Source: Dendrobates tinctorius (lineage: Eukaryota). From it: 64,000 nucleotides of DNA. Where the stretch lies: the NCBI RefSeq assembly GCF_039654945.1, contig NW_027361869.1, forward strand, positions 2,976,001 through 3,040,000, written 5' to 3'. The position numbers were made by a program, and so were the translations under genes. Under the pieces are notes generated by a model that did not search any database, was not told where the DNA came from, and was given only the letters and a program-made list of their open reading frames with translations. Shown here one piece after another: positions 16,651-38,203 of the stretch (within the stretch, counting starts at the first letter, position 1; each line of letters opens with the position of its first letter).

Positions 16651-19413
16651 ATGAAGAAGTATGGTGGAAGATGCCGTGGAAGTGGGCGAGGGTTGCCAGC
16701 TGGTCCTGATGGTGGTGTTGGTGGTGGTGCTTCTGCTGGTTGTGGCAAAAGCACAATAGCACCTAAGGCAGGAGGTGGTGAGCTGCCTTCATTGTCTGGC
16801 TCCACAAGGCCTCGTAGGCTCCCTTTTCTGGGAGTAGGTAAACCGCTTTTAAAGCCGGAGCTTCAGGAACAAGTTTTGGCTTACATTGCTGACACAGCCT
16901 CCAGCTCTATCGCCTCCTCTTCTGAAGTTTCAAAAAATAAAAGCACTGCGTCGTCAGTGGAGGCTCCTGATCAGGAACAACACCTTTCCTTGTGTCCTTC
17001 ACCCCAACCAAAAGTGAAGGATGTGGCAGGCCACACAACAGATTACTCCATGGAGCTGTTTTCTCATACCATGCCTGGGTTATCAAGTCAATTCATGAAT
17101 TCCCCAGTCCAAGATGAATCTGACATGGAGTGCAGTGATGCACAGCCACTGCTAGATTTATCTGCTGGTACATTCACTCAGAGCACTACATTGTCCTCGC
17201 AGTGTACTGAGCCAGAATCTGACCCTGATGAAACGCAGGTGCCTCTTCCCGCATACTATACCACCTTACATGGTGACACAGAGGAAGGTGCACATGACAT
17301 TGAAGAGGAGGTGATGGATGACCCAGTTGTTGACCCAGATCGGCATCCTTTGGGGGAAGAGGGTGCCGCTGCCAATAGCTCAGAAGAGGAAGAGGAGCAT
17401 CCGCAGCAGGCATCGACATCGCAACAGCTGTTATCTGGCAGGCCCGGAGCAGTCCAAAAATGGGTTACAAAAAGCAAAAGAGTTGCAGGACAGCTTGGCC
17501 AGAAGGTCAAATTAGCACAGCGTGCAAGGACTCAAAATGTCTTCCATAGTAGGAAGAGTGCAGTGTGGCACTTTTTTGAACAAAATCCTAATGATCAGGC
17601 AAAGGTTATCTGTAAGAAGTGCGCAAAGACCTTTAGCCGAGGGAAAAATCTGAGAAATTTGAATACCAGTTGCATGCTAAGACATTTAACCACCATGCAC
17701 TTGCAAGCGTGGACGGACTACCAAACCTCACATACCACATGTGCAACTACTCCCAAAGAAGGTAGTCAGCAACACTACATTGTTTCCCCCACTGTAAGCC
17801 CACCGTTTAGCACAGCAGCAAATGTTGAGGTGTCCTTGCAAGGCCAAAGCAGTCAGGGAATCACAATGTTATATCAACGAAAGACTGAATCTAGGCCATC
17901 TGAAAGAACACCAACTCCATCACCATCATCAACCCTCTCTCAGTCGGCCATGTCCACCGCTAGTTCCATCATATGCAGCTCTCAAGTCCAGCTCACCTTA
18001 CCAGAGACTATGAGTAGGACAAGAAAATACTCATCCTCTCATCCGCGTACACTGGGTTTGAACGCCCACATTGCCAAACTAATCTCGTTAGAGATGATGC
18101 CCTACCGGTTAGTTGAAAGCGCAGCTTTCCGCGATCTCATGGCCTATGCAGTACCACGCTATGACCTACCTAGTCGCCACTTTTCTCGCAAAGCCATCCC
18201 AGCCCTCCACCTTCATGTGAAAGACCGCATTGTCCATGCACTCAAGCAGTCAGTGAGTGGAAAGGTGCACCTCACAACTGATGCATGGTCCAGTAGGCAT
18301 GGCCAGGGCCGTTACGTGTCCATCACTGCGCACTGGGTTAATTGTGTGGATGCAGGGTCCACAGGGGACAGCGGAGGTGGGACAGTGCTGCCTAGCCCAC
18401 GGTATAGGAAACAGTTGGCTGTAGGCGTTCGACCCTCCTCCTCCTCCTCCAGAAGCGAAAGCTCATCCACAGAGCGCAGTCGCACGAGCACTCCATCCGC
18501 AGCTGCCAGTGTTGCACACGAGGTGTCCCCCTATCGATCAGCTAGTGGAAAGCGTCAGCAGGCTGTGTTGCAGATGATGTGTTTGGGCGACAGACACACC
18601 GCGGATGTACTGGCCGACTACTTTCAGCGACAAACTGAGTCATGGCTGGGCAGTCTACATCTTGAGGCAGGCAAGGTAGTTAGTGATAACGGCCGGAAAT
18701 TTGTGGCAGCCAAAGCCCTTTCAAAACTCAGACACATACCTTGCCTGGCTCACACCTTGAAACTGGTGGTGCAGTGCTTCCTCAATAATTATTCGGAGTT
18801 AACAGGCTTGCTCCATAAGGTTCGAAGACTGTGCTCGCACATCCGCCAGTACACTCCAGTCGTATGCAGAAGCTGCAGCGATTGCTCCACCTTCCCAAGC
18901 ACTGCCTAATTATCGACGTTGCAACAAGGTGGAACTCCACCCTGCACATGGTTGAGCGGCTGTGGGAACAGAGGCAGGCCGAAATGCATTTGTGGGAGGA
19001 TACACGGCCAGGCACTTTGAGAGCAGACATGGAGTTGACAGGTGTGCAGTGGTCGAAGCTGAAAGACCTCTGTAAAGTCCTTCAGTGTTTTGAGGAATGC
19101 ACACGGCTGGTAAGCGCAGACGACGCCATCCTAAGCATGAGCATCCCACTTATGCGTCTGCTCATGCAAACTTTGACGCACATTAAGGAGCAGGCATCTG
19201 CAGCCGAGGTAGATGAGGAGGAAGAGGAGGAGGGAAGCCTTGATGACAGTCAGCCAATTTCTGCTCCGGGACCACTCCTGGACGAGGTGGAGGAAGAGGA
19301 GGATGATGATGGTGATGATTATTTAGGGGAGGAGGATGCATCTCGTGGGGCAAGAGAAAATGTTGGCGTGGCAAGGTCTGCTACAGGGTTTGTGCGTGAC
19401 TGGAGGGATGTGT
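16651..19413 (+). pseudogene. hAT transposase pseudogene (BED finger, DDE), frameshifted near 18850 and lacking the C-terminus
   Basis: SAVWHFF..CKKC..LRHLTTMH BED finger, LTTDAWS, VSDNG, CLAH, TRWNST. A short deletion relative to copy B shifts the frame, and the third catalytic E is missing. Confidence 0.9.
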
Positions 19414-21895
19414 AATCCCTGCAGAGCTGTATGATCAGTACCACCACCTTGTCCCCGCAAACCTGTGTGATCAGTGCAACCACCTCCTCCCTACAGAGCT
19501 GTATGATCACTGCCACCACCTCATCCCTGCAGAGCTGTATGAGCAGTGACACCACCTCGTCCCCGCAACGCTGTATGATCAGTGTCACCACCTTGTCCAC
19601 GCAGAGCTGTATGATCTGTACCACCACCTCCTCCCCGCAAAGCTGTATGATCAGTGCCACCACCTTGTCCACGCAGAGCTGCATAATTAGTGCCACCACC
19701 TCATCCCTGCAGAGCTATATGATAAGTGCCACCACCTCATCGTTGCAGAGCTGTATGATCAGTGCCACCACCTCATCCCTGCAGAGCTGTATGATAAGTG
19801 CCACCACCTCATCATTGCAGAGCTGTATGATCAGTGCCACTACCTCATCCCTTCAGAGCTGTATGATTAGTGTCACCACCTCATCCCTGCAGAGCTGTAT
19901 GATCAGTGCCACCACCTCCTCCCTGCAGAGCCGTATGATCATTTCCACCACCTCATCCCTGCAGAGCTGTATGATAAGTGCCACCACCTCATCCCTGCAG
20001 AGCTGTATAATTAGTGCCACTACCTCATCCCTGCAGAGCTGTATTTTCAGTGCCACCACCTCATCATTGCAGAGCTGTATGATCAGTGCCACCACCTCAT
20101 CCCTGCAGAGCTGTATGATCAGTGCCACTACCACATCCCTGCAGAGCTGTATGATCAGTGCCACCACCTCATCCCTGCAGAACTGTATGATCACTGCCAC
20201 CACCTCATCCCTGCAGAGCTATATGATCAGTGCCACCACTTCCTCACTGCAGAGCTGTATGATTAGTGTCACCACATCATCCCTGCAGAGCTGTATGATA
20301 AGTGCCACCACCTCATCCCTGCAGAGCAGTATGATTAGTTTCACCACCTCATCCCTGCAGAGCTGTATGATAAGTGCCACCACCTCATCCCTGCAGAGCT
20401 GTTTGATTAGTGCCACCACCTCATCCCTGCAGAGCTGTTTGATTAGTGCCACCACCTCATCCCTGCAGAGCTGTATGATTAGTGTCACCTCCTCATCCCT
20501 GCAGAGCAGTATGATCGGTGCCACCATCTCATCCCTGCAGAGTTGTATGATCGGTGCCACTACCTCATAACTGCAGAGTTGTATGATCGCTGTCACCACT
20601 TCATCCCTGTGGAGCTGTATGATCAGTGCCTCCACCTCCTCCCTGCAGAGCCGTATGATCATTTCCAACACCTCATCCCTTCAGAGCTGTATGATAAGTG
20701 CCACCACCTCATCCCTGCAGAGCTGTATGATTAGTGCCACTACCTCATCCCTGCAGAGCTGCATTTTCAGTGCCACCACCTCATCGTTGCAGAGCTGTAT
20801 GATCAGTGCCACCACCTCATCACTGCAGAGCTGTATGATAAGTGCCACCACCTCATCCCTGCAGAGCTGTATAATCACTGCCACCACCTCATCATTGCAG
20901 AGCTGTATGATCAGTGCCACTACCACATCCCTGCAGAGCTGTATGATCAGTGCCACTACCACATCCCTGCAGAGCTGTATGATTAGTTCCACTACCCCAT
21001 CCCTGCAGAGCTGTATGAGCAGTGCCACCACCTCATCCCTGCAGAGCTGTATGATCAGTACCACGACCTCATCCCTGCAGAGCTGTTTGATTAGTGCCAC
21101 CACCTCATCCTTGCAGATCTATACGATTAGTGTCACCTCCTCATCCCTGCAGAGCTGTATGATCGGTGCCACCCTCTCATCCCTGCAGAGTTATATGATC
21201 GGTGCCACTACCTCATAACTGCAGAGCTGTATGATCGCTGTCAGCACCTCATCCCTGTAGAGCTGTATGATCAGTGCCTCCACCTCCTCCCTGCAGAGCC
21301 GTATGATCATTTCCACCACCTCATCCCTGCAGAGCTGTATGATAAGTGCCACCACCTCATCCCTGCAGAGCTGTATGATTAGTGCCACTACCTCATCCCT
21401 GCAGAGCTGTATTTTCAGTGCCACCACCTCATCGTTGCAGAGCTGTATGATCAGTGCCACCACCTCATACCTGCAGAGCTGTATGATAAGTGCCACCACC
21501 TCATCCCTGCAGAGCTGTATGATCACTGCCACCACCTCATCATTGCAGAGCTGTATGATCAGTGCCACTACCACATCCCTGCAGAGCTGTATGATTAGTG
21601 CCACCACCTCATCCCTGCAGAGCTGTATGAGCAGTGCCACCACCTCATCCCTGCAGAACTGTATGATCAGTACCATGACCTCGTCCCCGCAAAGCTGTAT
21701 GATCAGTGCCACCACCTTGTCCACGCTAAGCTGTATGATCCGTACCACCACCTCCTCCCCGCAAAGCTGTATGATCAGTACCACCACCTTGTCCACGCAG
21801 AGCTGCATGATTAGTGCCACCACCTCATCCCTGCAGAGCTGTATGATAAGTGCCACCACCTCATCCCTGCAGAGCTGTATGATTAGTGTCACCAC
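19414..21895 (+). repeat. 36-bp minisatellite derived from the histone 3'-processing signal, left segment (about 69 units)
   Basis: Unit AGTGCCACCACCTCATCCCTGCAGAGCTGTATGATC; matches 35/36 the sequence starting at the 3' arm of the H1 stem-loop (54678). Confidence 0.95.
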
Positions 21896-22741
21896 TAGAG
21901 TTGAGCGACTTTTGGTTTTTTAGGCTCGCGTTTCGTTTCGTGAAACCCGACTTTTCCAAAAGTCGGGTCGAGCAAGATCGTCCGATTATAGGGAAAAGTC
22001 GGGGTCGTCCCGAAACACGAAACCCAATGTAAGTCAATGGGGAATAAAAGTCGGCAGTGAGAGGAGGACAGGAAACACACCTACAGTGCCCATTTGAATG
22101 CCAAAAGCATCAATTCTTCTTTCTTAAGCTTGTCAACCTTAATTAACTTCATAATACAAGTTACGCACTGAAAAATGGGGGTTATTTGGCTACAAACTGT
22201 GGGGGGGAGGGCTGGCTCCAGGTTTTCATGTGCCCTGGGCGAAAGAGCGCCCCTTTAACACATACCACAACTCATCATGCTCCGATACGGCAGAGAAATA
22301 GCGGTATAGTCCAATGAAAAATACCTCACTTTTTACATCTCATGACGAGGCCCATCTATTTCTCCATACAGAATCATTGGTCCCATATAATGTTTGAAAC
22401 AGTATATGATGAGCTCCACATAATGCTACAGTATATGATGGTCCCCATGGATGAAGCTCCACTGTCTTATGGGCCCAAATAATGCTCCAAACATAATGGG
22501 CCCCATTTCTAATGCTCTAGTGTATAATGGGCCCTGTAAATGCTGCTCCAGTGTCTGATGTCCACCTTTGGAATGTTCCAGTGTATGGTGGGCCCCATCT
22601 ATCATTCTCCAGAGTATAGTGCTCCCCAAAAATTGCTGTCCCAACATTGAAAACAATCAAATAAGTCTCCTCGCTAGGGAATCCCTGTACTTGTCTGGAC
22701 AGGTGCTGTAGCTTGCTTAACAGCTCGCCAGCCGTTCTCAC

Positions 22742-23770
22742 GCCCAGTATGGATTACACGTGATTGCACAAAGGTGAGAAAGGGTACCGTATCCCCAGAT
22801 AACATGTATGGATAGCGTACACATTCAAAATATATGTCTCAGGAGGCAGGCTCAGACGGTGTTAGGCCCAGTATGGATTGCACGTGATTGCACAAAGGTT
22901 AGAAAGGGTACCGTATCACCGGATAACATGTATGGATAGCGTACACATTCAAAATATATGTCTATACAGCATGAGGCAGGCTCAGACGGTGTTAGGCCCA
23001 GTATGGATTGCACGTGATTGCACAAAGGTTAGAAAGGGTACCGTATCCCCAGATAACATGTATGGATAGCGTACACATTCAAAATATATGTCTCAGGAGG
23101 CAGGCTCAGACGGTGTTAGGCCCAGTATGGATTGCACGTGATTGCACAAAGGTTAGAAAGGGTACCGTATCCCCGGATAACATGTATGGATAGCGTACAC
23201 ATTCAAAATATATGTCTATACAGCATGAGGCAGGCTCAGATGGTGTTAGGCCCAGTATGGATTGCACGTGATTGCACAAAGGTTAGAAAGGGTACCGTAT
23301 CCCCAGATAACATGTATGGATAGCGTACACATTCAAAATATATGTCTCAGGAGGCAGGCTCAGACGGTGTTAGGCCCAGTATGGATTGCACGTGATTGCA
23401 CAAAGGTTAGAAAGGGTACCGTATCCCCGGATAACATGTATGGATAGCGTACACATTCATAATATATGTCTATACAGCATGAGGCAGGCTCAGACGGTGT
23501 TAGGCCCAGTATGGATTGCACGTGATTGCACAAAGGTTAGAAAGGGTACCGTATCACCGGATAACATGTATGGATAGCGTACACATTCAAAATATATGTC
23601 TATACAGCATGAGGCAGGCTCAGACGGTGTTAGGCCCAGTATGGATTGCACGTGATTGAACAAAGGTTAGAAAGGGTACCGTATCACCGGATAACATGTA
23701 TGGATAGCGTACACATTCAAAATATATGTCTATACATCAGGAGGCAGGCTCAGACGGTGTCAGGCACAGT
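22742..23770. repeat. 124/130-bp tandem repeat inside hAT copy B (about 8 units)
   Basis: Unit GGATTGCACGTGATTGCACAAAGGTTAGAAAGGGTACCG..., with 6-bp length variants. The same array is at 58460-60605. Confidence 0.9.
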
Positions 23771-24195
23771 ATGGATTTGACGGCCCGGATTACACAGCGG
23801 AGGAGCAGGGAGAGGTAAAGATTGCAAATGCTGGGGCCCTGCCCAAGCAAGGGGGGCCCACTCGTGGGCGTCGGTACTGGCACTGGGCCCCTCATAGTAC
23901 AGCGGTGTGTCTGACGGCGGGTGTGCACCACCACCGTCAGAGACACTTGATTGCACTATGAGGGACCCTGTGCCAGTGCCCGCGCCCAAGAGTCGGCCTA
24001 CCCACCCGTCCAGGGCAATGGCACTCGCACGGTGTCGTGCGCTAGGTGGTGACCCCGGCCATGGGGGGGAGGCAGCACAGTTAGGGAGTTTTAGAAAGTG
24101 GCATATGTTGATGTTGGACATTCAGCTGATGCAAAAGGCGAAATAGGTGAAGTACCAGGAAGAGGTGGACCAAAGCAAGCCATTTTTCTGTCACC

Positions 24196-27100
24196 CTATG
24201 TGTCATCAGGGGAAGGTGGGACAAAATCCTTGGAAACCCATGCGTGGTTCATTTTAATGAAGGTTAGATCATCCACATTTTGGGTTGACAGACGGGTCCT
24301 TTTTTCTGTCAGGATTGATCCAGCTGCACTGAAGACTCTTTCCAATAGCACACTTGCAGCTGGGCAAGCGAGCTCCTGTAAGGCATATTGGGCCAATTCA
24401 GGCCAGGTGTCCAGTTTAGCGGCCCAATAGTCAAAGGGGAATGACCTGTGTGGGAGAACATCGATATGGGAGGAAAAGTAGTTTGTAACCATAGTTGACA
24501 ACTGCTGTCTCCTGTCACTTTCCATCGATGCAGTATTACCAGTTGTGTGAGCGGTATTTGAAAAATCAGTCCACAACATTGTCATGAAACCCCTGTCTCC
24601 AACGCCACTTCTGCTGTGTGCACCACGAACACCTCTGCCAAGCTGCCCCCGGCCCGTACGGCTCGTGTGAGAACCATCACCGCTGCTGTGTGCTGGGAAT
24701 GCCTCAAGCAACCGATTTACCAGAGTTGCTTGTTTATTAGCCAATATTAGGTCAAGGTTCTCCTGTGGCATGATGTTTTGTAATTTGCCTTTATAGCGTG
24801 GATCCAGGATGCTGGCCAACCAGTAGTCGTCATCGTTCATCATTTTGGCAATGCGGGGGTCCCTTTTTAGGATCCGCAAGGCATAATCTGACATGTGGGC
24901 CAATGTTCCCGGTGTCAATGATGCACTGCGAGTGCTGGGTGGAGGAGCACTTTCTGGCAAATCCACATCCCTCCAGTCACGCACAAACCCTGTACCAGAC
25001 CTTGCCACGCCAACATTTTCACTTGCCCCACGAGATGCATCCTCCTCCCCTAAGTAATCATCCCCATCATCATCCTCCTCCTCCTCTTCTTCCTCCACCT
25101 CGTCCAGGAGAGGTCCCTGAGCAGACAATGGCTGAATGTCATCAAGGATTCCCTCCTCCTCTTCCTCCTCATCAACATTGGCTGCAGAGGCCTGCTCCTT
25201 AAGGTGCGTCAAAGTTTGCATGAGCAGACGCATAAGTGGGATGCTCATGCTTAGGATGGCGTCGTCTGCGCTTACCAGCCGTGTGCATTCCTCAAAACAC
25301 TGAAGGACTTTACAAAGGTCTTTCAGCTTCGACCACTGCACACCTGTCAACTCCATGTCTGCTCTCAAAGTGCCTGGCCATGTATCCTCCCACAAATGCA
25401 TTATGGCCTGCCTCTGCTCGCACAGCCGCTCCACCATGTGCAGGGTGGAGTTCCACCTTGTTGCAATGTCGATAATGAGGTGGTGGTTGGGAAGGTGGAG
25501 CAATCGCTGCAGCTTCTGCATACGAACGGAGTGTACAGGTGACCGGCGGATGTGTGCGCACAGTCTTCGCACCTTATGGAGCAGGGCTGTTAACTCCGGA
25601 TAATTTTTGAGGAAGCACTGCACCACCAGGTTCAAGGTGTGAGCCAAGCAAGGTATGTGGCTGAGTTTTGAAAGGGCTATGGCTGCCACAAAATTACGGC
25701 CGTTATCACTAACTACCTTGCCTGCCTCAAGATGTACACTGCCCAGCCATGACTCAGTTTGTCGCTTCAAGTACTCGGCCAGCACCTCGGCGGTGTGTCT
25801 GTCGCCCAAACACATCATCTGCAACACAGCCTGCTGACACTTTCCACTAGCTGCTCGATAGGGGGACACATCGTGTGCAACAGTGGCAGCTGCAGATGGA
25901 GTGCTCGTACGACTGCGCTCTGTGGACGAGCTTTCGCTTCTGGAGGAGGAGGAGGAGGGTCGAACGCCTACAGCCAACTGTTTCCTATACCGTGGGCTAG
26001 GCAGCACTGTCCCACTACCGCTGTCCCCTGTGGACCCTGCATCCACCACATTAACCCAGTGCGCAGTGATGGACACGTAACGGCCCTGGCCATGCCGACT
26101 GGACCATGCATCAGTTGTGAGGTGCACCTTTCCGCTCACTGACTGCTTGAGTGCATGGACAATGCGGTCTTTCACATGATGGTGGAGGGCTGGGATGGCT
26201 TTGCGAGAGAAGAAGTGGCGACTGGGTAGGTCATAGCGTGGTACTGCATAGGCCATGAGTTCGCGGAAAGCTGTGCTTTCCACCAACCGAAAGGGCATCA
26301 TCTCAAACGAGATTAGTTTGGCAATGTGGGCGTTCAAACCCAGTGTACGCGGATGAGAGACTGAGTACTTTCTTGACCTACTCATAGTGTCTGGGAGGGT
26401 GAGCTGGACTTGAGAGCTGCATATGGTGGAAGTAGCGGTGGACAGGGCGGACTGAGAGAGGGTTGATGATGGTGATGGAGTTGGTGTTCTTTCTGATGGC
26501 CTAGAATCAGTCTTTCGTTGATATAACAGTGGGATTCCCTGACTGCTGTGGTCTTGCAACGACACCTCAACATTTGCTGCTGTGCTAACCGGTGGGCTTA
26601 CAGTGGGGGAAACAATGTAGCGTTGCTGACTACCTTCGTTGTGATCAGTTGCACATGTGGCACTTGAGGTTTGGTGTTGTGTCCACGCTTGCAAGTGCAT
26701 GCTGGTTAAATGTCTAAGCATGCAACTGGTATTCAAATTTTTCAGATTTTTCCCTCGGCTAAACGTCTTTGCGCACTTCTTACAGATAACCTTGGCCTGA
26801 TCATGAGGATTTTGTTCAAAAAAGTGCCACACTGCACTCTTCCTACTTTGGCAGACATTTTGCGGCCTAGCACGCTGTGATCTTTTGACCCTCTGGACAA
26901 GCTGTCCAGCAACTCTTTTGATGTTTGGAACCTGTCTTTGGAGTGCTCCGGGCCTGCCAGATAACAGCTGTTGCGATGTCGATGTCTGCTGTGGATGCTC
27001 CTCATCTGAGCTATTGGAAGCAGCACCCTCTTCCCCCAATGGATGCCAATCTGGGTCAACAACTGGGTCATCCATCACCTCCTCTTCTATGTCATGTGCA

Positions 27101-27732
27101 CCTTCCTCTGTGTCACCGTGTATGGTGGTATAGTGTGCGGGAAGGGGCACCTGAGTCTCATCAGGGTCAGAATCTGGCTCTGTACACTGCGAGGACAATG
27201 TAGTGCTCTGAGTGAATGTACCAGCAGAATCATCCATCAGCGGCTGTGCATCAGTGCACTCCATGTCAGATTCATCTTGGCCTGGGTAATTCACCATTTG
27301 ACTTGATAATCCAGGCATGGTATGTGAAAACAGCTCCATGGAGTAATCAGTAGTATGGCCTGCGTCATCCTTCAATCTTGGTTGGGGTGAAGGACACAAG
27401 GAAAGGTGTGGTTCATGAACATGAGCCTCCAATGACGACTCAGTGCTTTTACTTTTTACAACTGAAGAAGAGGAGGCGATAGAGCTGGAGGCTGAGTCAG
27501 CAATGTAAGACAAAACTTTTTCCTGATGCTCTGGCTTTAAAAGCGGTTTGCCAACTCCTAGAAAACTAAGCGTTCGAGGCCTTATGTAGCCAGACAATGA
27601 CGCAGGGTCAGCACCTCCTGCATTCGGTCCTATTTTGCTCTTGCCACTACCATCAGATCCACCACCAACACCATCATTACCAGCTGCCAACCCCCGCCCA
27701 ATTCCACGGCCTCTTCCACGAGCCTTCCTCAT
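24196..27732 (-). CDS. hAT transposase, ZBED-like, intact, 1178 aa from ATG 27732 (MRKARGRGRG...)
   Basis: Uninterrupted ORF with basic N-terminus, BED zinc finger, D (LTTDAWS), D (VSDNGRN), CxxH (CLAH), TRWNST, acidic insert and the C-terminal hAT dimerisation region (WPELAQYALQELACPAASVLLERVFS) with the catalytic E. Confidence 0.93.
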   Translation of the reverse strand: MRKARGRGRGIGRGLAAGNDGVGGGSDGSGKSKIGPNAGGADPASLSGYIRPRTLSFLGVGKPLLKPEHQEKVLSYIADSASSSIASSSSVVKSKSTESSLEAHVHEPHLSLCPSPQPRLKDDAGHTTDYSMELFSHTMPGLSSQMVNYPGQDESDMECTDAQPLMDDSAGTFTQSTTLSSQCTEPDSDPDETQVPLPAHYTTIHGDTEEGAHDIEEEVMDDPVVDPDWHPLGEEGAASNSSDEEHPQQTSTSQQLLSGRPGALQRQVPNIKRVAGQLVQRVKRSQRARPQNVCQSRKSAVWHFFEQNPHDQAKVICKKCAKTFSRGKNLKNLNTSCMLRHLTSMHLQAWTQHQTSSATCATDHNEGSQQRYIVSPTVSPPVSTAANVEVSLQDHSSQGIPLLYQRKTDSRPSERTPTPSPSSTLSQSALSTATSTICSSQVQLTLPDTMSRSRKYSVSHPRTLGLNAHIAKLISFEMMPFRLVESTAFRELMAYAVPRYDLPSRHFFSRKAIPALHHHVKDRIVHALKQSVSGKVHLTTDAWSSRHGQGRYVSITAHWVNVVDAGSTGDSGSGTVLPSPRYRKQLAVGVRPSSSSSRSESSSTERSRTSTPSAAATVAHDVSPYRAASGKCQQAVLQMMCLGDRHTAEVLAEYLKRQTESWLGSVHLEAGKVVSDNGRNFVAAIALSKLSHIPCLAHTLNLVVQCFLKNYPELTALLHKVRRLCAHIRRSPVHSVRMQKLQRLLHLPNHHLIIDIATRWNSTLHMVERLCEQRQAIMHLWEDTWPGTLRADMELTGVQWSKLKDLCKVLQCFEECTRLVSADDAILSMSIPLMRLLMQTLTHLKEQASAANVDEEEEEEGILDDIQPLSAQGPLLDEVEEEEEEEDDDGDDYLGEEDASRGASENVGVARSGTGFVRDWRDVDLPESAPPPSTRSASLTPGTLAHMSDYALRILKRDPRIAKMMNDDDYWLASILDPRYKGKLQNIMPQENLDLILANKQATLVNRLLEAFPAHSSGDGSHTSRTGRGQLGRGVRGAHSRSGVGDRGFMTMLWTDFSNTAHTTGNTASMESDRRQQLSTMVTNYFSSHIDVLPHRSFPFDYWAAKLDTWPELAQYALQELACPAASVLLERVFSAAGSILTEKRTRLSTQNVDDLTFIKMNHAWVSKDFVPPSPDDT

Positions 27733-27799
27733 TTTTGGTAGAAATGTAGACAAAATCCAACAAACTATATAGTAATGTAAAACAAGGTACAAGGTGTCT

Positions 27800-30270
27800 A
27801 TAGGACAGGGGAGATTTTGAATATCTGCACACACTTTTGGACACTGGACACTTTTGGATTGTGTGAGGCCCAATGAATATCTCAGCGCTATGTGACAGGC
27901 TCGATGGCACTGCTGTGACAAAAGTGACTAGAGGATAAGGGAGATTTTGAATATCTGCACACACTTTTGGACACTGGACACTTTTGGATTGTGTGAGGCC
28001 CACTGATATCTCAGCGCTATGTGACAGGCTCGATGGCACAGCTGTGACAAAAGTGACTAGAGGATAAGGGAGATTTTGAATATCTGCACACACTTTTGGA
28101 CAGTGGACACTTTTGGATTGTGTGAGGCCCACTGTTATCTCAGCGCTATGTGACAGGCTCGATGGCACTGCTGTGACCTAAGTGACTAGAGGATAAGGGA
28201 GATTTTGAATATCTGCACACACTTTTGGACACTGGACACTTTTGGATTGTGTGAGGCCCACTGATATCTCAGCGCTATGTGACAGGCTCGATGGCACTGC
28301 TGTGACAAAAGTGACTAGAGGATAAGGGAGATTTTGAATATCTGCACACACTTTTGGACACTGGACACTTTTGGATTGTGTGAGGCCCACTGATATCTCA
28401 GCGCTATGTGACAGGCTCGATGGCACTGCTGTGACAAAAGTGACTAGAGGATAAGGGAGATTTTGAATATCTGCACACACTTTTGGACAGTGGACACTTT
28501 TGGATTGTGTGAGGCCCACTGTTATCTCAGCGCTATGTGACAGGCTCGATGGCACTGCTGTGACCTAAGTGACTAGAGGATAAGGGAGATTTTGAATATC
28601 TGCACACACTTTTGGACACTGGACACTTTTGGATTGTGTGAGGCCCACTGATATCTCAGCTCTATGTGACAGGCTCGATGGCACTGCTGTGACAAAAGTG
28701 ACTAGAGGATAAGGGAGATTTTGAATATCTGCACACACTTTTGGACACTGGACACTTTTGGATTGTGTGAGGCCCACTGATATCTCAGCGCTATGTGACA
28801 GGCTCGATGGCACTGCTGTGACAAAAGTGACTAGAGGATAAGGGAGATTTTGAATATCTGCACACACTTTTGGACACTGGACACTTTTGGATTGTGTGAG
28901 GCCCACTGATATCTGAGCGCTATGTGACAGGCTCGATGGCACTGCTGTGACAAAAGTGACTAGAGGATAAGGGAGATTTTGAATATCTGCACACACTTTT
29001 GGACACTGGACACTTTTGGATTGTGTGAGGCCCACTGATATCTCAGCGCTATGTGACAGGCTCGATGGCACTGCTGTGACAAAAGTGACTAGAGGATAAG
29101 GGAGATTTTGAATATCTGCACACACTTTTGGACACTGGACACTTTTGGATTGTGTGAGGCCCACTGATATCTGAGCGCTATGTGACAGGCTCGATGGCAC
29201 TGCTGTGACAAAAGTGACTTGAGGATAAGGGAGATTTTGAATATCTGCACACACTTTTGGACAGTGGACACTTTTGGATTGTGTGAGGCCCACTGTTATC
29301 TCAGCGCTATGTGACAGGCTCGATGGCACTGCTGTGACCTAAGTGACTAGAGGATAAGGGAGATTTTGAATATCTGCACACACTTTTGGACACTGGACAC
29401 TTTTGGATTGTGTGAGGCCCACTGATATCTCAGCGCTATGTGACAGGCTCGATGGCACTGCTGTGACAAAAGTGACTAGAGGATAAGGGAGATTTTGAAT
29501 ATCTGCACACACTTTTGGACACTGGACACTTTTGGATTGTGTGAGGCCCACTGATATCTCAGCGCTATGTGACAGGCTCGATGGCACTGCTGTGACAAAA
29601 GTGACTAGAGGATAAGGGAGATTTTGAATATCTGCACACACTTTTGGACACTGGACACTTTTGGATTGTGTGAGGCCCACTGATATCTCAGCGCTATGTG
29701 ACAGGCTCGATGGCACAGCTGTGACAAAAGTGACTAGAGGATAAGGGAGATTTTGAATATCTGCACATACTTTAGGACACTGGACACTTTTGGATTGTGT
29801 GAGGCCCACTGATATCTGAGCGCTATGTGACAGGCTCGATGGCACTGCTGTGACAAAAGTGACTAGAGGATAATTGAGATTTTGAATATCTGCACACACT
29901 TTTGGACACTGGACACTTTTGGATTGTGTGAGGCCCACTGATATCTCAGCGCTATGTGACAGGCTCGATGGCACTGCTGTGACAAAAGTGACTAGAGGAT
30001 AAGGGAGATTTTGAATATCTGCACACACTTTTGGACACTGGACACTTTTGGATTGTGTGAGGCCCACTGATATCTCAGCGCTATGTGACAGGCTCGATGG
30101 CACTGCTGTGACAAAAGTGACTAGAGGATAAGGGAGATTTTGAATATCTGCACACACTTTTGGACACAGGACACTTTTGGATTGTGTGAGGCCCAATGAA
30201 TATCTGAGCGCTATGTGACAGGCTCGATGGCACAGCTGTGACCAAAGTGACTAGAGGATAAGGGAGATTG
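27800..30270. repeat. 129-bp tandem repeat (about 19 near-identical units) between promoter and transposase ATG in copy B
   Basis: Unit GTGACTAGAGGATAAGGGAGATTTTGAATATCTGCACACACTTTTGGACACTGGACAC...; source of the 43-aa repeat ORFs. Confidence 0.95.
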
Positions 30271-30849
30271 GATTGCTTTTAATAAAGCAGTTTGCGGAGC
30301 AGTGGGTAAACAACAATGCCAGCCTGTCAGGAAGCCTTAAAAGGCAGCCCAACAACCAACACCACTGATACACCACTTTATAGCCTCCCCTTGCACTGCA
30401 CACACAGTGACTGGTGTGTTGTGCAGGCCAAATTGCTATCAGCAGCAGAAGCAGTTTTTTTTTTCTTCTCAGCAGGACAAAAAAAAAAAATTGGGATTGC
30501 TTAAGCAGTTTGAGGCCCAATGAATATCTGAGCGCTATGTGACAGGCTCGATGGCGCAGCTGTGACCAAAGTGACTAGAGGATAAGGGAGATTGGATTGC
30601 TTTTAAAAAAGCAGTTTGCGGAGCAGTGGGTAAACAGCAATGCCAGCCTGTCAGGAAGCCTTAGAAGGCAGCCCAACAACCAACACCACTGATACACCAC
30701 TATATAGCCTCCCCTTGCACTGCACACACAGTGACTGGTGTGTTGTGCAGGCCAAATCGCTAGCAGCAGAAGCAGTTTTTTTGTCTTCTTCCCTGCCTAA
30801 CGCTCTCCCTACAGAATCAGCAGCAACCTCTCCCTATGCTAAGATCGGC

Positions 30850-31005
30850 AGAAGTAAGATGGCGGTCGGCGTGCACGCCCTTTTATACCCCCTGTGACGC
30901 CCACCAAAGCAAGCCAATCACTTGCATGCCCTTCTGAAAGATGGTGGTGACCCGTGCCTATGTCATCACGTTGCCCACAGTGTCCGTGGATCCTGATTGG
31001 CTGAA
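30850..31005 (-). promoter_or_regulatory. Putative transposase promoter of hAT copy B
   Basis: Minus-strand GGGGTATAAAAGGGCG near 30876-30891, CCAAT/ATTGG boxes near 30914 and 30996, YY1-like AAGATGGCGG at 30856-30865. Conserved in copy A (about 15525-15670). Confidence 0.55.
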
Positions 31006-31162
31006 AAAGAGCGCAAAACAAACTTTTGAAACGCGACTTTGGCGCGTAAGTCGCCGACCTCGTGGCCGACCTCATCCTAGGGTCGGGTTTCGTTTCATGA
31101 AACCCGACTTTGCCAAAAGTCGGCGACTTTTGAATTTTTTCGACCCGTTTCGCTCAACTCTA

Positions 31163-34100
31163 GTCACCACCTCATCCCTGCAGAGCTGTATGATAAGTGC
31201 CACCACCTCATCCCTGCAGAGCTGTATGATTAGTGCCACTACCTCATCCCTGCAGAGCTGTATTTTCAGTGCCACCAACTCATCCCTGCAGAGCTGTATG
31301 ATCACTGCCACCACCTCATCATTGCAGAGCTGTATGATCAGTGCCACTACCACATCCCTGCAGAGCTGTATGATTAGTGCCACCACCTAATCCCTGCAGA
31401 ACTGTATGATCACTGCCACCACCTTATCCCTGCAGAGCTATATGATCAGTGCCACCACTTCCTCACTGCAGAGCTGTATGATTTGTGTCACCACATCATC
31501 CCTGCAGAGCTTTATGATAAGTGCCACCACCTCATCCCTGCAGAGCAGTATGATTAGTTTAACCACCTCATCCCTGCAGAGCTGTATGATAAGTGCCACC
31601 ACCTCATCCCTGCAGAGCTGTTTGATTAGTGCCACCACCTCATCCCAGCAGAGCTGTATGATCGGTGCCACCATCTCATCCCTGCAGAGTTGTATGATCG
31701 GTGCCACTACCTCATAACTGCAGAGCTGTATGATCGCTGTCACCACCTCATCCCTGCAGAGCTGTATGATAAGTGCCACCAACTCATCATTGCAGAGCTG
31801 TATGATCAGTGCCACTACCACATCCCTGCAGAGCTGTATGATTAGTGCCACCTCATCCCTGCAGAGCTGTATGATATGTGCCACCACCTCATCATTGCAG
31901 AGCTGTATGATCAGTGCCACTACCACATCCCTGCAGAGCTGTATGATTAGTGCCACCACCTCCTCCCCGCAAAGCTGTATGATCAGTGCCACCACCTTGT
32001 CCACGCAGAGCTGCATGATTAGTGCCACCACCTCATCCCGGCAGAGCTGTATGATAAGTGCCACCACCTCATCCCTGCAGAGCTGTATGATTAGTGTCAC
32101 CACCTCATCCCTGCAGAGCTGTATGATAAGTGCCACCACCTCATCCCTGCAGAGTTGTATGATCGGTGCCACTACCTCATAACTGCAGAACTGTATGATC
32201 AGTGCCACCACCTCCTCCCTGCAGTGCCGTATGATCATTTCCACCACCTCATCCCTGCAGAGCTGTATGATAAGTGCCACCAACTCATCCCTGCAGAGCT
32301 GTATGATTAGTGTGACTACCTCATCCCTGCAGAGCTGTATTATCAGTGCCATCACCTCATCGTTGCAAAGCTGTATTATAAGTGCCACCACCTCATCCCT
32401 GCAAAGCTGTATAATCAGTGCCACCACCTTGTTCACACAGAGCTGTATGATTAGTGCGACTACCTCATCCCTGCAGAACTGTATTATCAGTGCCTCCACC
32501 TCATCGTTGCAGTGCTGTATGATCAGTGCCACCACCTCATCCCTGCAGAGCTGTATGATAAGTGCCACCAACTCATCCCTGCAGAGCTGTATGATTAGTG
32601 TGACTACCTCATCCCTGCAGAGCTGTATTATCAGTGCCATCAGCTCATCCCTGCAAAGCTGTATAATCAGTGCCACCACCTTGTTCACACAGAGCTGTAT
32701 GATTAGTGCGACTACCTCATCCCTGCAGAACTGTATTATCAGTGCCTCCACCTCATCGTTGCAGAGCTGTATGATCAGTGCCACTACCTCATCCCTGCAG
32801 AGCTGTATGATTAGTGCCACCACCTCCTCCCCGCAAAGCTGTATGATCAGTGCCACCACCTTGTCCACGCAGAGCTGCATGATTAGTGCCACCACCTCAT
32901 CCCGGCAGAGCTGTATGATTAGTGTCACCACCTCATCCCTGCAGAGCTGTATGATAAGTGCCACCACCTCATCCCTGCAGAGTTGTATGATCGGTGCCAC
33001 TACCTCATAACTGCAGAGCTGTATGATCACTGTCACCACCTCATCCCTGTAGAGCTGTATGATCAGTGCCACCACCTCCTCCCTGCAGTGCCGTATGATC
33101 ATTTCCACCACCTCATCCCTGCAGAGCTGTATGATAAGTGCCACCAACTCATCCCTGCAGAGCTGTATGATTAGTGTGACTACCTCATCCCTCCAGAGCT
33201 GTATTATCAGTGCCATCACCTCATCGTTGCAAAGCTGTATTATAAGTGCCACCACCTCATTCCTGCAAAGCTGTATAATCAGTGCCACCACCTTGTTCAC
33301 ACAGAGCTGTATGATTAGTGCGACTACCTCATCCCTGCAGAACTGTATTATCAGTGACTCCACCTCACCGTTGCAGTGCTGTATGATCAGTGCCTCCACC
33401 TCATCATTGCAGAGCTGTAGGATCAGTGCCACTACCTCATCCCTGCAGAGCTGTATGATTAGTGCCACCACCTCATCCCTGCAGAGCTGTATGATTAGAG
33501 CCACTACCCCATCCCTGCAGAGCTGTATGATCAGTACCACGACCTCGTCCCCGCAAAGCTGTATGATCAGTGTCACCACCTTGTCCACACAGAGCTGTAT
33601 GATCCGTACCACCAACTCGTCCCCGCAAAGCTGTGTGATCAGTGCCACCACCTTGTCCACGCAGAGCTGCATGATTAGTGCCACCACCTCATCCCTGCAG
33701 AGCTGTATGATAAGTGCCACCACCTCATCCCTGCAGAGCTGTATGATCACTGCCACCACCTCATCGCTGCAGAGCTGTATGATCATTGCCACTACCTCAT
33801 CCCCGAGAGCTGTATTATCAGTGCCACCACCTCATCCCTGCAGAGCAGTATGATTAGTGTCACCAGCTCATCCCTGCAGAGCTGCGTGATAAGTGCCACC
33901 ACCTCATCCCTGCAGAGCTGTATGATCGGTGCCAACTCATCCCTGCAGAGTTGTATGATCGGTGCCACTACCTCATAACTGCAGAGCTGTATGATCGGTG
34001 CCACTACCTCATAACTGCAGAGCTGTATGATCGCTGTCACCACCTCATCCCTGTAGAGCTGTATGATCAGTGCCACCCCCTCCTTCCTGCAGAGCCGTAT

Positions 34101-37100
34101 GATCATTTCCACCACCTCATCACTGCACAGCTGTATGATAAGTGTCACCACCTCATCCCTGCAGAGCTGTATTATCAGTGCCACTACCTCATCCCTCCAG
34201 AGGTGTATGATCAGTAACACCACCTTGTCCCCAAAGAGCTGTATGATCAATGTCACCACCTCCTCACTGCAGAGCCGTATGATCATTTCCACCACCTCAT
34301 CCCTGTAGAGCTGTATGATTAGTGCCACTACCTCATCCCTGCAGAGCTGTATTATCAGTGCCACCACCTCTTCCCTGCAGAGCTGTATGATCGGTGCCAC
34401 ATCTCATTCCTGCAGAGCTGTATGATCAGTACCACCACCAAGTCCCCGCAAAGCTGTCTGATCAGTGCCACCAACTTGTCCACGCAGAGCTGCATGATTA
34501 GTGCCACCACCTCATCCCTGCAGAGCTGTATGATCATTTCAAACAACTCATCCCTGCAGAGCTGTATAAGTGCCACCATCTCATCCCTGCAAAGCTGTAT
34601 GATCACTGTCACCACCTCATCCCTGCAGAGCTATATGATCAGTGCCATTTCCTTTTCCCTGCAGAGCTGTATGTTCAGTGCCACCACCTCCTCACTGAAG
34701 AGCTGTATGATTAGTGTCACCACCTCGTCCCTGCAAAGCTGTATGATCAGTGCTACCACCTTGTCCACACAGAGCTGTATAATCGGTGCCACTACTTCAT
34801 CGTTGCAAAGCTGTATGATCAGTGCCACCACCTCCTCCCTGCAGAGCTGTATGATCAGTACAACCAACTCTTCCCTGCAAAGCGGTAAGCCACCACCTTG
34901 TCCACACAGAGCTGTATTAGTGCCACCACCTCATCCCTGCAGAGCTGTATGATCAGTACCACCACCATGTCCCCGCAAAGCTGTATGATCAGTGCCACCA
35001 CCTCCTCCCTAGAGCCGTATGATCATTTCCACCAACTCTTCCTTGCAGAGCTGTATGATCACTGCCACCATCTCATCGCTGCAGAGCTGTATGATCAGTG
35101 CCACATCTTATCCCTGCAGAGCTGTATGATTGCTGTCACCACCTCATCCCTGCAGAGCTGTATGATCAGTGCCATCACCTCATTCCTGCAGAGCTGTATG
35201 ATCAGTACCACCACCTCGTCCCCGCAAAGCTGTATGATCAGTGCAGAGCTGTATGATTATTGTCACCACATCATCCCTGCAGAGCTATATAAGTGCCATC
35301 ACCTCATCCCTGCAGAACTGTATGATCAGTGCCACCACTTCCTCCCTGCAGAGCCGTATGATCATTTCAAACAACTCATCCCTGCAGAGCTGTATGATAA
35401 GTGCCACCATCTCATCCCTGCAGAGCTGTATGATCACTGTCACCACCTCATCCCTGCAGAGCTATATGATCAGTGCCATTTCCTCTTCCCTGCAGAGCTG
35501 TATGATCAGTGCCACCACCTCCTCACTGAAGAGCTGTATGATTAGTGTCACCACCTTGTCCCTGCAAAGCTGTATGATCAGTGTTACCACCTTGTCCACG
35601 CAGAGCTGTATGATCGGTGCCACTACTTCATCGTTGCAAAGCTGTATGATCAGTGCCACCACCTCCTCCCTGCAAAGCGGTAAAATCAGTGCCACCACCT
35701 TGTCCACACAGAGCTGTATGATTAGTGCCACCACCTCATCCCTGCAGAGCTGTATGATGAGTGCCACCACCTCATTCCTGCAAAGCTGTATGATCAGTGC
35801 CACCACCTCCTCCCTACAGAGCCGTATGATCATTTCCACCAACTCATCCCTGCAGAGCTGTATGATCAGTGCCATCACCTCATTCCTGCAGAGCTGTATG
35901 ATCAGTACCACCACCTCGTCCCCGCAAAGCTGTATGATCAGTGCAGAGCTGTATGATTATTGTCACCACATCATCCCTGCAGAGCTATATGATAAGTGCC
36001 ATCACCTCATCCCTGCAGAGCTGTATGATCACTGCCATCACCTCATCCTTGCAAACCTGTGTGATCAGTACCACAACCTCGTCCCCGCAAAGCTGAATGA
36101 TCAGTGCCACCACCTTGTCCACGCAGAGCTGTAAGATCGGTGCGATCTCCTCATCGTTGCAGAGCTGTATAATCAGTACCACCACCTTGTCCCCGCAAAG
36201 TTGTATGATCAGTGCCACCACCTCCTCCCTGCAGAGCCGTATGATCATTTCCACCACCTCATCACTGCAGAGCTGTATGATAAGTGCAACCACCTAATCC
36301 CTGCAGAGCTGTATGATAAGTGCCATCACCTCATCCCTGCAGAGCTGTATTATCAGTGCCACCACCTCATCCCTGCAGAGCTGAATGATTAGTGTCACCA
36401 CCCCATTGCTGCAGAGTTGTATGATCGGTGCCATTACCTCATAACTGCAGAGCTGTATGATCGCTGTCACCACCTCATCCCGGTAGAGCTGTATGATCAG
36501 TGTCACCACCTTGTCCACGCAGAGCTGTATGATCAGTACCACCACCTCCTCCCCGCAAAGCTGTATGATCACTGTAACCACCTTGTCCACGCAGAGCTGT
36601 ATGATTAGTGCCATCACCTCATCCCTGCAGAGCTGTATAATCAGTGCAAGCACCTCATCCCTGCAGAGCTGTATTAGTGCCACTCCCTCATCCCTGCAGA
36701 GCTGTATGATCAGTACCACCACCTTGTCCCCGCAAAGCTGTATGATCAGTGCCACCACCTCCTCCCTGCAGAGCGGTATGATCATTTCCACCTACTCATC
36801 CCTGCAGAGCTGTAAGATAAGTGCAACCACCACATCCTTGCAGAGCTGTATGATCACTGCCACCACCTCAACCCTGCAGAGCTTTATGATTAGTGCCACT
36901 ACCTCATCCCGGTAGAGCTGTATAATCAGTACCACCACCTCGTCCCCGCAAAGCTGTATTATCAGTGCCACCACCTTGTTCACGCAGAGCTCTATGATCG
37001 GTGCCACCACCTCATCCCTGCAGAGCTGTATGATCACTGCCACCACCTCATCGTTGCAGAGCTGTAATAATAATAATACATTTTATTTTTATAGCGCCGC

Positions 37101-37335
37101 CATATTCCGCAGCACTTTACATTTCAGAGGGGATTTGTACAGACAATAGACATTACAGCATAACAATAATCTCATACAGTAGATTATAACAAATACCAAG
37201 AGGAAAGAAAGCCCTGCTCACAAGCTTACAGTCTATGAGGAAATGTATTATCAGTGCCACTACCTCATCCCTGCAGAGCTGTATTATCAGTGCCACTACC
37301 TCATCCCTGCAGAGCTGTATTATCAGTGCCACCAC
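31163..37335 (+). repeat. 36-bp minisatellite derived from the histone 3'-processing signal, right segment (about 165 units)
   Basis: Continues in phase after the hAT TSD. More diverged toward the right end; interrupted at 37065-37242. Confidence 0.95.
37065..37242 (-). mobile_element. Retroposon fragment with an L2-type 3' tail
   Basis: Minus strand ends GTAAAGTGCTGCGGAATATGGCGGCGCTATAAAAATAAAATG followed by a (TAT)n tail, typical of L2 LINE and L2-dependent SINE tails. Confidence 0.65.
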
Positions 37336-38158
37336 CCCTAGATCAGATGCTGTTACACAGTGTCAATATTTACTGCCATTAAAAAGAATAAATAGTTTAC
37401 CAACTTGGATTACAATCTCCTCCACAGATCAGTATACATGGCTCTATGCACACATATATGTATGAGCTTCAATGCTCTGTTGAAGCTTCTGATGGAAACG
37501 GTGGAAAAACTTTCAGAAATGATACTCATTATTACTGAATTACACTTCAAGTTATTCTATGCAGTGCTCGGCACGGATACATATAATGGTTACTTCTCTA
37601 CACATCAGACGTTACAGAATTATTTTTAGAAGCTAAGGAAACTACAAAGTGCAGGAAATTCAAAATTCCGATCCGTCCTTGTGTTCAGCCAATCAGCAGA
37701 AGGGGGAGGAGCTAATGTTAACCGTTAACGAATGTGAAGTTCGCGCTCAGTGGCTGATGACTTTCCCGTCCTTTGTCTTCCTGAAGTTTGAGGACAGATA
37801 GCTGGAAACGTGTGTTGAGCCATCAAAGGTCGCTTCTGTTCCATGCAGGAGTCTGCCGATCTCTATATCCGCTTTCTATAATACCAGGAGCATAAGTTTA
37901 CCTGCCTCTATCCACTGTGACTCCGTCATACCATCCATATTCCTAGGACGGAGAATATAAAGAAACGAGGTCCTGCAGTTTACAGAGAACCTTAATAGAA
38001 GTAGGTGGAGGAGTCTCTAAAATGCTGATTAATATTATCTAGGCAGCCAACTATAGAACAGTAATTACACTCCTGCAGGGAAATGAATAACGTGACCCTG
38101 ATACATGATATAATGTGGCTGATGTCAGGAATTCGCTCGTCTTGAGGGAGGATTTGGG

Positions 38159-38174: not shown

Positions 38175-38203
38175 TGTGTTGCAGTCAGGTGGGCAGAACA
38201 GAT

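What the first reader, a model, noticed from the sequence alone, without database searches (positions are those of the whole stretch)
19414..37335. 8.4-kb array of about 235 HDE/cleavage-site units as the spacer at the cluster edge, with no H1 in front
Seen: the same 36-bp unit, same strand as H1, forms about 2.5 kb plus 5.9 kb around hAT copy B and ends about 820 bp from the convergent H3 stem-loop. One unit has the stem-arm form AGAGCC (about 33497). Diagnostic variants (CTCATAACTGCAGAG near 20565, 21213, 31712, 32177, 33005, 33972, 36438; GAGCCGTATGATCATTTCC) recur in blocks on both sides of the transposon, so there is higher-order structure that predates the insertion. Established: in the newt Notophthalmus, histone clusters are separated by satellite tracts that are read through on lampbrush loops at sphere loci. 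Inference: this is the H1-to-H3 spacer of a tandem histone repeat whose upstream H1 was lost, and a frog analogue of that arrangement built from the processing signal itself.
Basis: partly seen in the sequence, partly recalled or inferred. Interest (0 to 1): 0.8.

Follow-up and report, generated by a model that had tools for sequence, protein, structure and literature searches.

The report
Orphan tract of histone-H1-signal satellite
This is a real 8.4-kb tandem repeat whose 36-base unit was copied from the signal that ends histone H1 messenger RNA, a satellite found only in poison frogs and their closest relatives. This copy is a rearranged, transposon-split leftover, and nothing shows that it does anything.

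Summary
About 237 co-oriented 36-bp units lie at 19415-21895, 31163-37066 and 37244-37336. A 9.27-kb hAT transposon with a perfect 8-bp target duplication splits them, and the last unit ends 822 bp from the H3 stem-loop.

The unit is the sequence that follows the H1 stem-loop: the ACCA cleavage site plus the U7-pairing element AGAGCTGTA. New here is the direction of origin. Rhinoderma and Leptodactylus carry this sequence once behind H1. Anomaloglossus, Phyllobates and Ranitomeya imitator, like this genome, carry it as arrays that start at the H1 stem-loop.

Array-between-H1-and-H3 is the usual layout in Phyllobates and Anomaloglossus. This array differs:
- Its left edge is a breakpoint fused to a truncated hAT.
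- It meets a frameshifted H3 tail to tail.

Multi-unit block duplications predate the hAT insertion, but there is no regular higher-order repeat. The U7 site shows no clear selection. This scan has already reported the same satellite several times elsewhere in this genome.

The parts
15390..19414 (+). hAT copy A. It is intact at its outer end (TAGAGTTGAG at 15390) and cut off internally at a point matching position 3069 of copy B. It is about 90% identical to copy B, and its broken end is fused to the array.
19415..21895 (+). Left part of the 36-bp array, 69 units. It starts at unit position 9, so this is not a natural array start.
21896..31162 (-). hAT copy B, 9267 bp. It has 13-bp inverted ends, an intact 1241-aa transposase ORF (24196-27921, minus strand) and internal arrays of about 130 bp. 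The target duplication GTCACCAC lies at 21888-21895 and 31163-31170.
31163..37066 (+). Right part of the 36-bp array, 166 units. It becomes more decayed and richer in indels towards H3: identity to the consensus falls from 0.92 to 0.84-0.88.
37067..37243 (.). 177-bp non-array insertion inside the array tail. It has no other copy in the window.
37244..37336 (+). Last 2.6 units, 98% alike (a recent local triplication).
37337..38158 (.). 822-bp flank between the array and the H3 3' end. It contains an orphan copy (37638-37717, + orientation) of the CCAAT module found 120-200 bp upstream of H4 genes in all the frogs compared.
38159..38615 (-). Histone H3 gene with its stem-loop (38159-38174), convergent with the array. 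The reading frame shifts by +1 after ...REIAQDF, so this is a pseudogene or an assembly indel.
39447..40989 (-). 35-bp satellite, 44 copies, of the same family on the minus strand. It lies upstream of H3 and is co-oriented with it. It keeps the ancestral CCTTGTCCCCGG stretch, but its U7-pairing core has changed to AGATCTGTG.
54024..55101 (+). Reference case in the same window: the intact H1 gene, its stem-loop at 54668-54683, and the 12-unit seed array at 54676-55101 that begins inside the 3' arm of the stem.

Best explanation
The tract is an orphaned, rearranged piece of a satellite specific to poison frogs and their sister family (Dendrobatoidea).

Origin. The satellite arose when the 36 bp that follow the histone H1 stem-loop were duplicated in tandem in place. 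Those 36 bp hold a remnant of the 3' stem arm, the ACCA cleavage site, a short spacer and the U7-pairing downstream element AGAGCTGTA.

Growth. The array grows and shrinks by unequal exchange or slippage. This leaves multi-unit block duplications and very different lengths from locus to locus.

History of this copy (the events are shown; their cause is inferred):
1. A rearrangement removed whatever lay upstream and fused the array interior to an internally truncated hAT element.
2. Block duplications occurred within the array.
3. A young hAT element inserted and made an 8-bp target duplication.
4. The H3-side end decayed, and it now abuts the 3' end of a frameshifted H3 in a non-canonical, convergent arrangement.

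Function (inferred). The units are passengers, not working processing signals. None has a stem-loop, the U7-pairing site is not measurably protected from mutation, and sister arrays have fixed variants that destroy the pairing.
For: Unit equals the H1 3' flank:
- This is seen at the intact H1. The AGAG core sits at the same offset as in the other five histone genes of the window.
- AGAGCUGUA pairs with 9 consecutive bases of the U7 5' region as printed in PMC7026596.
- 63% of units have a predicted duplex of -12 kcal/mol or stronger, against 3% of shuffled units.

Direction of origin:
- The sequence is single-copy behind H1 in Rhinoderma (L007) and Leptodactylus (L009).
- It is tandem in Anomaloglossus, Phyllobates (two loci) and Ranitomeya imitator, always starting at the H1 stem-loop.
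- The alignment of these H1 3' ends is A2; families were checked in the taxonomy.

Rearranged orphan:
- hAT A is cut at the point matching position 3069 of copy B and is joined to unit position 9.
- There is no H1 remnant upstream.
- The left end is less decayed than the right end.

Order of events:
- hAT B has a perfect target duplication and perfect inverted ends, and the array stays in phase across the site.
- A 95.5% identical block spans the insertion site.

Neutrality:
- Mismatches between young block paralogs fall in the HDE core 17 times against 23.5 expected (p=0.15); adjusted for base composition, p=0.3.
- In R. imitator and Phyllobates arrays the core is no better kept than the rest (0.982 vs 0.982 and 0.951 vs 0.949).
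- The 35-bp array of this window and the Phyllobates consensus have duplex energies of -6.8 and -7.3 kcal/mol, at the shuffled level.
Against: - Across the whole array, unit positions 15-29 (the HDE) are the best-kept stretch, at about 95% against about 87% elsewhere. The two Anomaloglossus arrays lean the same way. A weak constraint is therefore not excluded.
- Consensus units of four genera keep the HDE and cleavage site and differ mostly in the spacer. This could reflect constraint, or homogenisation against the selected first copy.
- No read or RNA evidence could be obtained, so both the left junction and the transcriptional silence are unverified.
- U7 pairing was scored with the mammalian U7 5' region. 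The frog's own U7 was not available.
Confidence: 0.72

Rival explanations
1. The tract is the in-place H1-to-H3 spacer of a tandem histone unit that lost only its H1. As with the newt histone-cluster satellite, it is transcribed by read-through from histone promoters.
For: - Array-between-H1-and-H3 is the layout in Phyllobates and Anomaloglossus.
- The array has the orientation of the window's H1.
- The left edge is a breakpoint.
- The polarity of decay fits an H1 on the left.
- Read-through from histone genes into satellite is on record for Notophthalmus and Xenopus oocytes (PMC11602149, its references 75 and 76).
Against: - H3 is convergent with the array, not co-oriented, and it is frameshifted.
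- H3 has its own co-oriented upstream array of another subfamily.
- The right flank carries an H4-type promoter module, not the H3 promoter.
- With H1 gone, no histone promoter points into the array. Only the truncated hAT ORF does.
- No RNA data are available.
Confidence: 0.15
2. The arrays are used. Sense transcripts carrying hundreds of U7 sites could act as a fail-safe processing or termination zone behind H1, as a U7 snRNP sink, or as a scaffold for the histone locus body. This tract would be a relic of such a device.
For: - About 147 of 234 units keep a U7 duplex as strong as those of the window's working H2A and H4 signals.
- Arrays are kept behind H1 in four dendrobatoid genera.
- The HDE is the best-kept part of the unit in this array.
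- Substrates with a strong U7 duplex can be processed without SLBP (PMC7026596).
Against: - No unit has a stem-loop.
- Nine paired bases is the level at which processing was severely reduced in PMC7026596.
- There is no significant deficit of recent mutations in the HDE.
- Whole arrays have fixed HDE-breaking variants.
- Array length ranges from 0.4 to more than 5.5 kb between loci.
- One R. variabilis H1 lacks the array altogether.
- Co-orientation with H1 follows from in-place duplication and is not evidence of use.
Confidence: 0.1
3. The tract did not lose a local H1. It reached the cluster edge by segmental duplication or inversion from the main histone region several Mb away, or from the neighbouring unit.
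For: - The big array shares no block with the local H1-proximal array beyond the 86% background.
- The neighbourhood is a mosaic: an orphan H4 module, an inverted 35-bp array, and inverted promoter-like copies bracketing the block.
- Unchecked scan notes place far larger arrays 4-5 Mb away.
Against: No donor sequence could be examined. The truncated hAT at the junction fits a simple deletion equally well.
Confidence: 0.2
4. Part of the picture is an assembly artefact, either a false join at 19414/19415 or a wrong array length.
For: Long satellite arrays and multi-copy transposons are error-prone in assembly. The junction could not be checked with reads.
Against: - The join is not at a sequence shared by the two partners.
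- The hAT B junctions are biologically exact: target duplication, inverted ends and array phase all fit.
- Independent runs of the same organism hold 53-59% of the sampled words of the right flank.
Confidence: 0.08

Closest known systems
Newt (Notophthalmus viridescens) histone-cluster satellite, transcribed by read-through on lampbrush loops (Diaz & Gall 1985, as cited in PMC11602149)
   Same: A satellite fills the space next to histone gene clusters, downstream of a histone gene whose termination could fail.
   Different: The newt satellite is not known to derive from the processing signal. Here the unit is the H1 cleavage-site/HDE segment itself. Transcription is shown in the newt and is untested here. 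This tract has histone genes on one side only.
Canonical replication-dependent histone 3' processing signal (stem-loop, ACCA cleavage site, HDE pairing with U7 snRNA)
   Same: Every unit carries the cleavage-site motif and the HDE at the native spacing from each other. The first unit behind an H1 is that gene's working signal.
   Different: Array units lack the stem-loop that binds SLBP, and only 9 bases pair with U7. They are hundreds of tandem copies with no gene in front.
The same 36-bp satellite reported by this scan at other places in this genome (s1-366787, s1-369525, s1-369533, s1-376824, s1-382821 and others)
   Same: Same unit, same inferred origin, and the same conclusion that decay looks neutral.
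   Different: This tract has no H1 and is split by a hAT element. It is bounded by a truncated hAT and is convergent with H3.
Higher-order-repeat satellites such as primate alpha satellite
   Same: Multi-unit blocks recur at higher identity (92-96%) than single units (81-86%).
   Different: There is no fixed higher-order period. Block offsets are 18, 24, 26 and 54 units, and each block occurs only two or three times.

Membership tests
Dendrobatoid H1 3'-signal satellite | The unit is homologous to the sequence directly after the H1 stem-loop. | tested here: met
   The consensus unit differs from the first unit at the window's H1 by 1 base. The cross-species alignment is A2.
Dendrobatoid H1 3'-signal satellite | The array starts at an H1 stem-loop and is co-oriented with that H1. 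| tested here: not met
   The array is on the same strand as the window's H1, but no H1 or stem-loop lies in front of it. It starts at unit position 9, against a truncated hAT.
Dendrobatoid H1 3'-signal satellite | The array is followed by a co-oriented H3. | tested here: not met
   H3 is convergent with the array. The canonical layout is seen in L003, L004 and L006, and in this window for the 35-bp array.
Functional histone 3' processing signal | A stem-loop lies 5' of each HDE. | tested here: not met
   Rfam finds stem-loops only at the histone genes. The only + strand match to the exact H1-type stem-loop motif (GGCTCTTTTCAGAGCC) is at 54668, and the wider pattern scan adds only the H2A stem-loop at 45304 on the + strand, so none lies in the array.
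Functional histone 3' processing signal | The HDE is complementary to the U7 5' end. | tested here: inconclusive
   The consensus has 9 contiguous pairs and a predicted duplex of -14 kcal/mol. 63% of units reach -12 or stronger. This was scored with the mammalian U7 sequence from PMC7026596, not the frog's own.
Functional histone 3' processing signal | The HDE is under purifying selection. | tested here: not met
Newt-type histone spacer satellite with read-through transcription | The satellite lies between histone gene clusters. | tested here: inconclusive
   Histone genes lie on the right only. To the left are a truncated hAT and an NDK gene.
Newt-type histone spacer satellite with read-through transcription | The satellite is transcribed from histone promoters. 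| not testable with these tools
   No run is on record as RNA.
Regular higher-order repeat | A fixed multi-unit period runs across the array. | tested here: not met
   Mean identity by lag is flat at 0.81-0.83, with small bumps at 18, 24 and 64 units. Blocks have differing offsets.
hAT transposon (the interrupting element) | Terminal inverted repeats, an 8-bp target duplication, and a transposase with BED finger and hAT dimerisation domains. | tested here: met

The most novel reading that the evidence does not exclude
In dendrobatoid frogs, read-through transcripts from H1 run into these arrays. Their many U7-pairing sites then recruit U7 snRNP and histone-locus-body factors, or trigger repeated cleavage. 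This would give a natural built-in fail-safe terminator or scaffold at histone loci. Orphan tracts such as this one would be discarded pieces of that device.
Probability: 0.1. Interest if true: 0.8.

Novelty: new variant of a known kind. Interest (0 to 1): 0.45.

Why it matters
A satellite whose unit is a known RNA-processing signal is a rare case in which both the birth of a satellite and its direction (signal to repeat) can be shown. The signal is single-copy in two outgroup families and tandem in four dendrobatoid genera.

It also places hundreds of potential U7 snRNA sites at histone loci. That makes an old question testable: do histone-cluster satellites matter for read-through, termination or the histone locus body?

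This particular tract mainly shows that such arrays persist, rearrange and take up transposons without a gene in front. That argues for passive DNA.

Tried and rejected
- RNA and read evidence. The look-up of sequencing runs found only assembled contigs and no run on record as RNA. No coverage, strand or junction check was therefore possible.
- Transcript contigs for H1. The listing of cluster members showed no transcript-assembly members for the H1 proteins.
- Regular higher-order repeat: rejected.
- Selection on the U7 site: not supported.
- Recent kinship between the big array and the H1-proximal array: none beyond the 86% background.
- Homology between the right flanks of the two arrays: none.
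- The AGAGCC unit at 33497 as an ancestral stem remnant: rejected as uninformative, being 1 of 216 units.
- Literature. Searches by topic and by unit sequence found no description of this satellite.
- A scan note calling this genome cane toad. The nearest H1 proteins are dendrobatid, and the one Bufo bufo H1 locus examined has another HDE and no array.
- The N run at 44336-44472 was left untouched.
Full report
**What is there**

Tandem Repeats Finder reports one 36-bp repeat at 19415-21895 (68.9 copies), 31165-37066 (164.7 copies) and 37244-37336 (2.6 copies). A fourth, short array lies at 54676-55101. A fuzzy scan with the consensus unit finds 234 units in the first three stretches. All are on the + strand, and none is on the - strand at 9 or fewer mismatches. 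A tiling parse gives 68 + 166 units, 216 of them exactly 36 bp long. The stem-loop is at 38159-38174 on the minus strand.

**What the unit is**

The window's only H1 gene (54024-54638; Linker_histone) ends in a stem-loop at 54668-54683 (Rfam Histone3). The unit follows it directly. It consists of ACCACC (the cleavage site), a pyrimidine-rich spacer, GCAGAGCTGTATGAT and a tail. The tail, TCAGTGCC, resembles the 3' arm of the stem, TCAGAGCC. In the other five histone genes of the window the purine core AGAG sits at the same offset from the stem.

AGAGCUGUA is complementary to nine consecutive bases of the U7 snRNA 5' region as printed for human and mouse in PMC7026596. With that sequence as a stand-in, the consensus unit gives a predicted duplex of -14 kcal/mol. 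That is stronger than the window's H2A and H4 signals. 63% of units reach -12 or stronger, against 3% of shuffled units.

**Where the repeat came from**

The window lies in NCBI assembly GCA_039654945.1. Its H1 is closest to dendrobatid H1 proteins. I fetched the H1 loci of related frogs.
- In Ranitomeya imitator (L005), Phyllobates terribilis (L003, L006) and Anomaloglossus baeobatrachus (L004, family Aromobatidae), the H1 stem-loop is followed at once by a co-oriented array of the same unit. The arrays have 152, 19, about 30 and 42 copies. The Anomaloglossus unit is 35 bp.
- In the outgroups Rhinoderma darwinii (L007) and Leptodactylus fuscus (L009), the same sequence follows the H1 stem-loop once. 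Homology then ends where the dendrobatoid second unit begins.
- The one Bufo bufo H1 locus examined has another downstream element and no array.

So a conserved single-copy H1 signal was amplified in the common ancestor of poison frogs and their sister family. This gives the direction of the event.

**The transposon and the block structure**

The interruption is a 9267-bp hAT element at 21896-31162.
- It has 13-bp inverted ends.
- Its 1241-aa ORF is intact, with BED-finger and hAT dimerisation domains.
- Its 8-bp target duplication GTCACCAC is perfect. Removing the element and one copy of the duplication restores the 36-bp phase.

Within the rejoined array, multi-unit blocks recur at 92-96% identity, against 81-86% for random unit pairs.
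- A block of about 1 kb recurs at an offset of 18 units.
- A block of 0.8 kb recurs at an offset of 24 units.
- A 626-bp block at 19854-20479 matches, without gaps and at 95.5%, a block that spans the insertion site.

There is no fixed higher-order period.

**The left edge**

The array begins at unit position 9. It is joined to a second hAT copy (15390-19414, + strand, about 90% identical to the first). That copy is intact at its outer end and cut at an internal point inside the transposase ORF. This is a rearrangement breakpoint, not a natural array start. No H1 or H1 remnant lies upstream. Further left are a promoter-like segment and a nucleoside diphosphate kinase gene.

The left end is less decayed than the right end: identity to the consensus is 0.90-0.94 against 0.84-0.88. 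In two of three intact arrays of other species, the end far from H1 is also the most decayed. This fits an H1 once lying to the left, but it does not show it.

**The right edge does not fit the simple spacer model**

In Phyllobates (two loci) and Anomaloglossus (two consecutive units), the array lies upstream of a co-oriented H3, 320-450 bp from its start codon. Rhinoderma has H1 followed by H3 without an array. In this window four things differ.
- The big array faces the 3' end of H3.
- The H3 reading frame shifts by +1 after ...REIAQDF, which means a pseudogene or an assembly indel.
- The 822-bp flank holds an orphan copy of the CCAAT module found upstream of H4 genes in every frog compared.
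- The position upstream of H3 and co-oriented with it is taken by the 35-bp satellite at 39447-40989 on the minus strand.

That 35-bp satellite is the same family: 29 of 36 positions match, with an alignment score of 19 against a maximum of 9 for shuffles. It keeps the ancestral CCTTGTCCCCGG stretch seen in the outgroups. At least one further rearrangement is therefore needed to explain the layout, and its order relative to the left-edge event is not resolved.

**Is the U7 site kept by selection?**

Across the whole array, unit positions 15-29 are the best kept. However, old variants amplified by block duplication inflate such profiles.
- Counting only mismatches between young paralogous blocks (63 unit pairs, 94 mismatches), the HDE core has 17 against 23.5 expected (p=0.15). 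With base composition allowed for, p=0.3.
- In the R. imitator and Phyllobates arrays the core is no better kept than the rest. The two Anomaloglossus arrays lean slightly towards the core.
- The 35-bp array of this window and the Phyllobates consensus have fixed changes in the core that bring the predicted U7 duplex down to the shuffled level.
- No unit has a stem-loop.
- Nine paired bases is the level at which processing was severely reduced in PMC7026596.

I conclude that the units are most likely passengers.

**What could not be done**

No sequencing run is on record as RNA for this stretch. Transcription, strand and the junctions are therefore untested. The N run at 44336-44472 was left alone.

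**Prior art**

This scan has already reported the same satellite several times elsewhere in this genome, with the same origin and the same neutral-decay verdict. Those notes are unchecked AI notes. I re-tested origin and decay here. I could not test their statements about 29-45-kb arrays between clusters. One note calls the genome cane toad; the H1 relatives found here are dendrobatid.

Full-text searches by topic and by the unit sequence found no published description. Read-through from histone genes into satellite DNA is on record for Notophthalmus and Xenopus oocytes (PMC11602149).

**Verdict**

The tract is a real but orphaned and rearranged piece of a lineage-specific satellite born from the H1 3' signal. 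The origin story is solid and appears unpublished. Nothing supports a function for this tract.

Noticed in passing
window 39447-40989 (minus strand): The 35-bp satellite (44 copies, 94% matches) between H4 and H3 is an inverted subfamily of the same H1-signal satellite. It is co-oriented with H3 and upstream of it, keeps the ancestral CCTTGTCCCCGG stretch, and has a weakened U7 match.
   Followed up: yes
window 38204-38615 (minus strand): The H3 gene next to the array has a +1 frameshift after ...REIAQDF. The remainder reads correctly in the next frame. This is either a pseudogene or an assembly indel.
   Followed up: partly
window 37638-37717 (also 43548-43617, 47671-47753 and about 42330-42400): A conserved CCAAT-box module of about 70 bp lies 120-200 bp upstream of H4 genes in this window and in Phyllobates, Anomaloglossus and R. 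imitator. An orphan copy sits in the flank right after the big array, with no H4 behind it. A longer stretch (37636-37854) is 75% like a segment 2.2 kb upstream of an H1 in R. variabilis (L002 27526-27760).
   Followed up: partly
window 55105-55543 and 14884-15266: A promoter-like segment (CCAAT plus TATAAAAAG) starts exactly where the H1-proximal array ends. It has an inverted copy, about 70% identical, upstream of the NDK gene at the left. A second shared block lies at 56358-56463 and 14322-14418. The histone block is thus bracketed by inverted copies of one segment.
   Followed up: partly
window 15390-19414, 21896-31162 and 56636-64000: Three copies of one large hAT family lie within 64 kb, all in or near arrays of the satellite. 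Copy C is 97% identical to copy B and copy A about 90%. Rfam finds an 18S rRNA-like piece at 57948-58378 inside copy C.
   Followed up: partly
window 37067-37243: A 177-bp non-repeat insertion in the array tail has TGTA on both sides and no other copy in the window. It is probably a transposon fragment.
   Followed up: no
window 1-4600: A 48-bp satellite (96 copies, 90% matches, strong GC skew) runs off the left end of the window.
   Followed up: no
L002 (Ranitomeya variabilis) 29988-30720: An H1-like gene has a stem-loop followed by an H3-type downstream element (ACCAAATCC...GACGAGCTG) and no array. Not every dendrobatid H1 carries the satellite.
   Followed up: no
window 48065-48487 and 51194-53346; L005 8659-8878; L002 27922-28201: The 21-bp satellite upstream of H1 is shared with both Ranitomeya species at the same relative position.
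   Followed up: no
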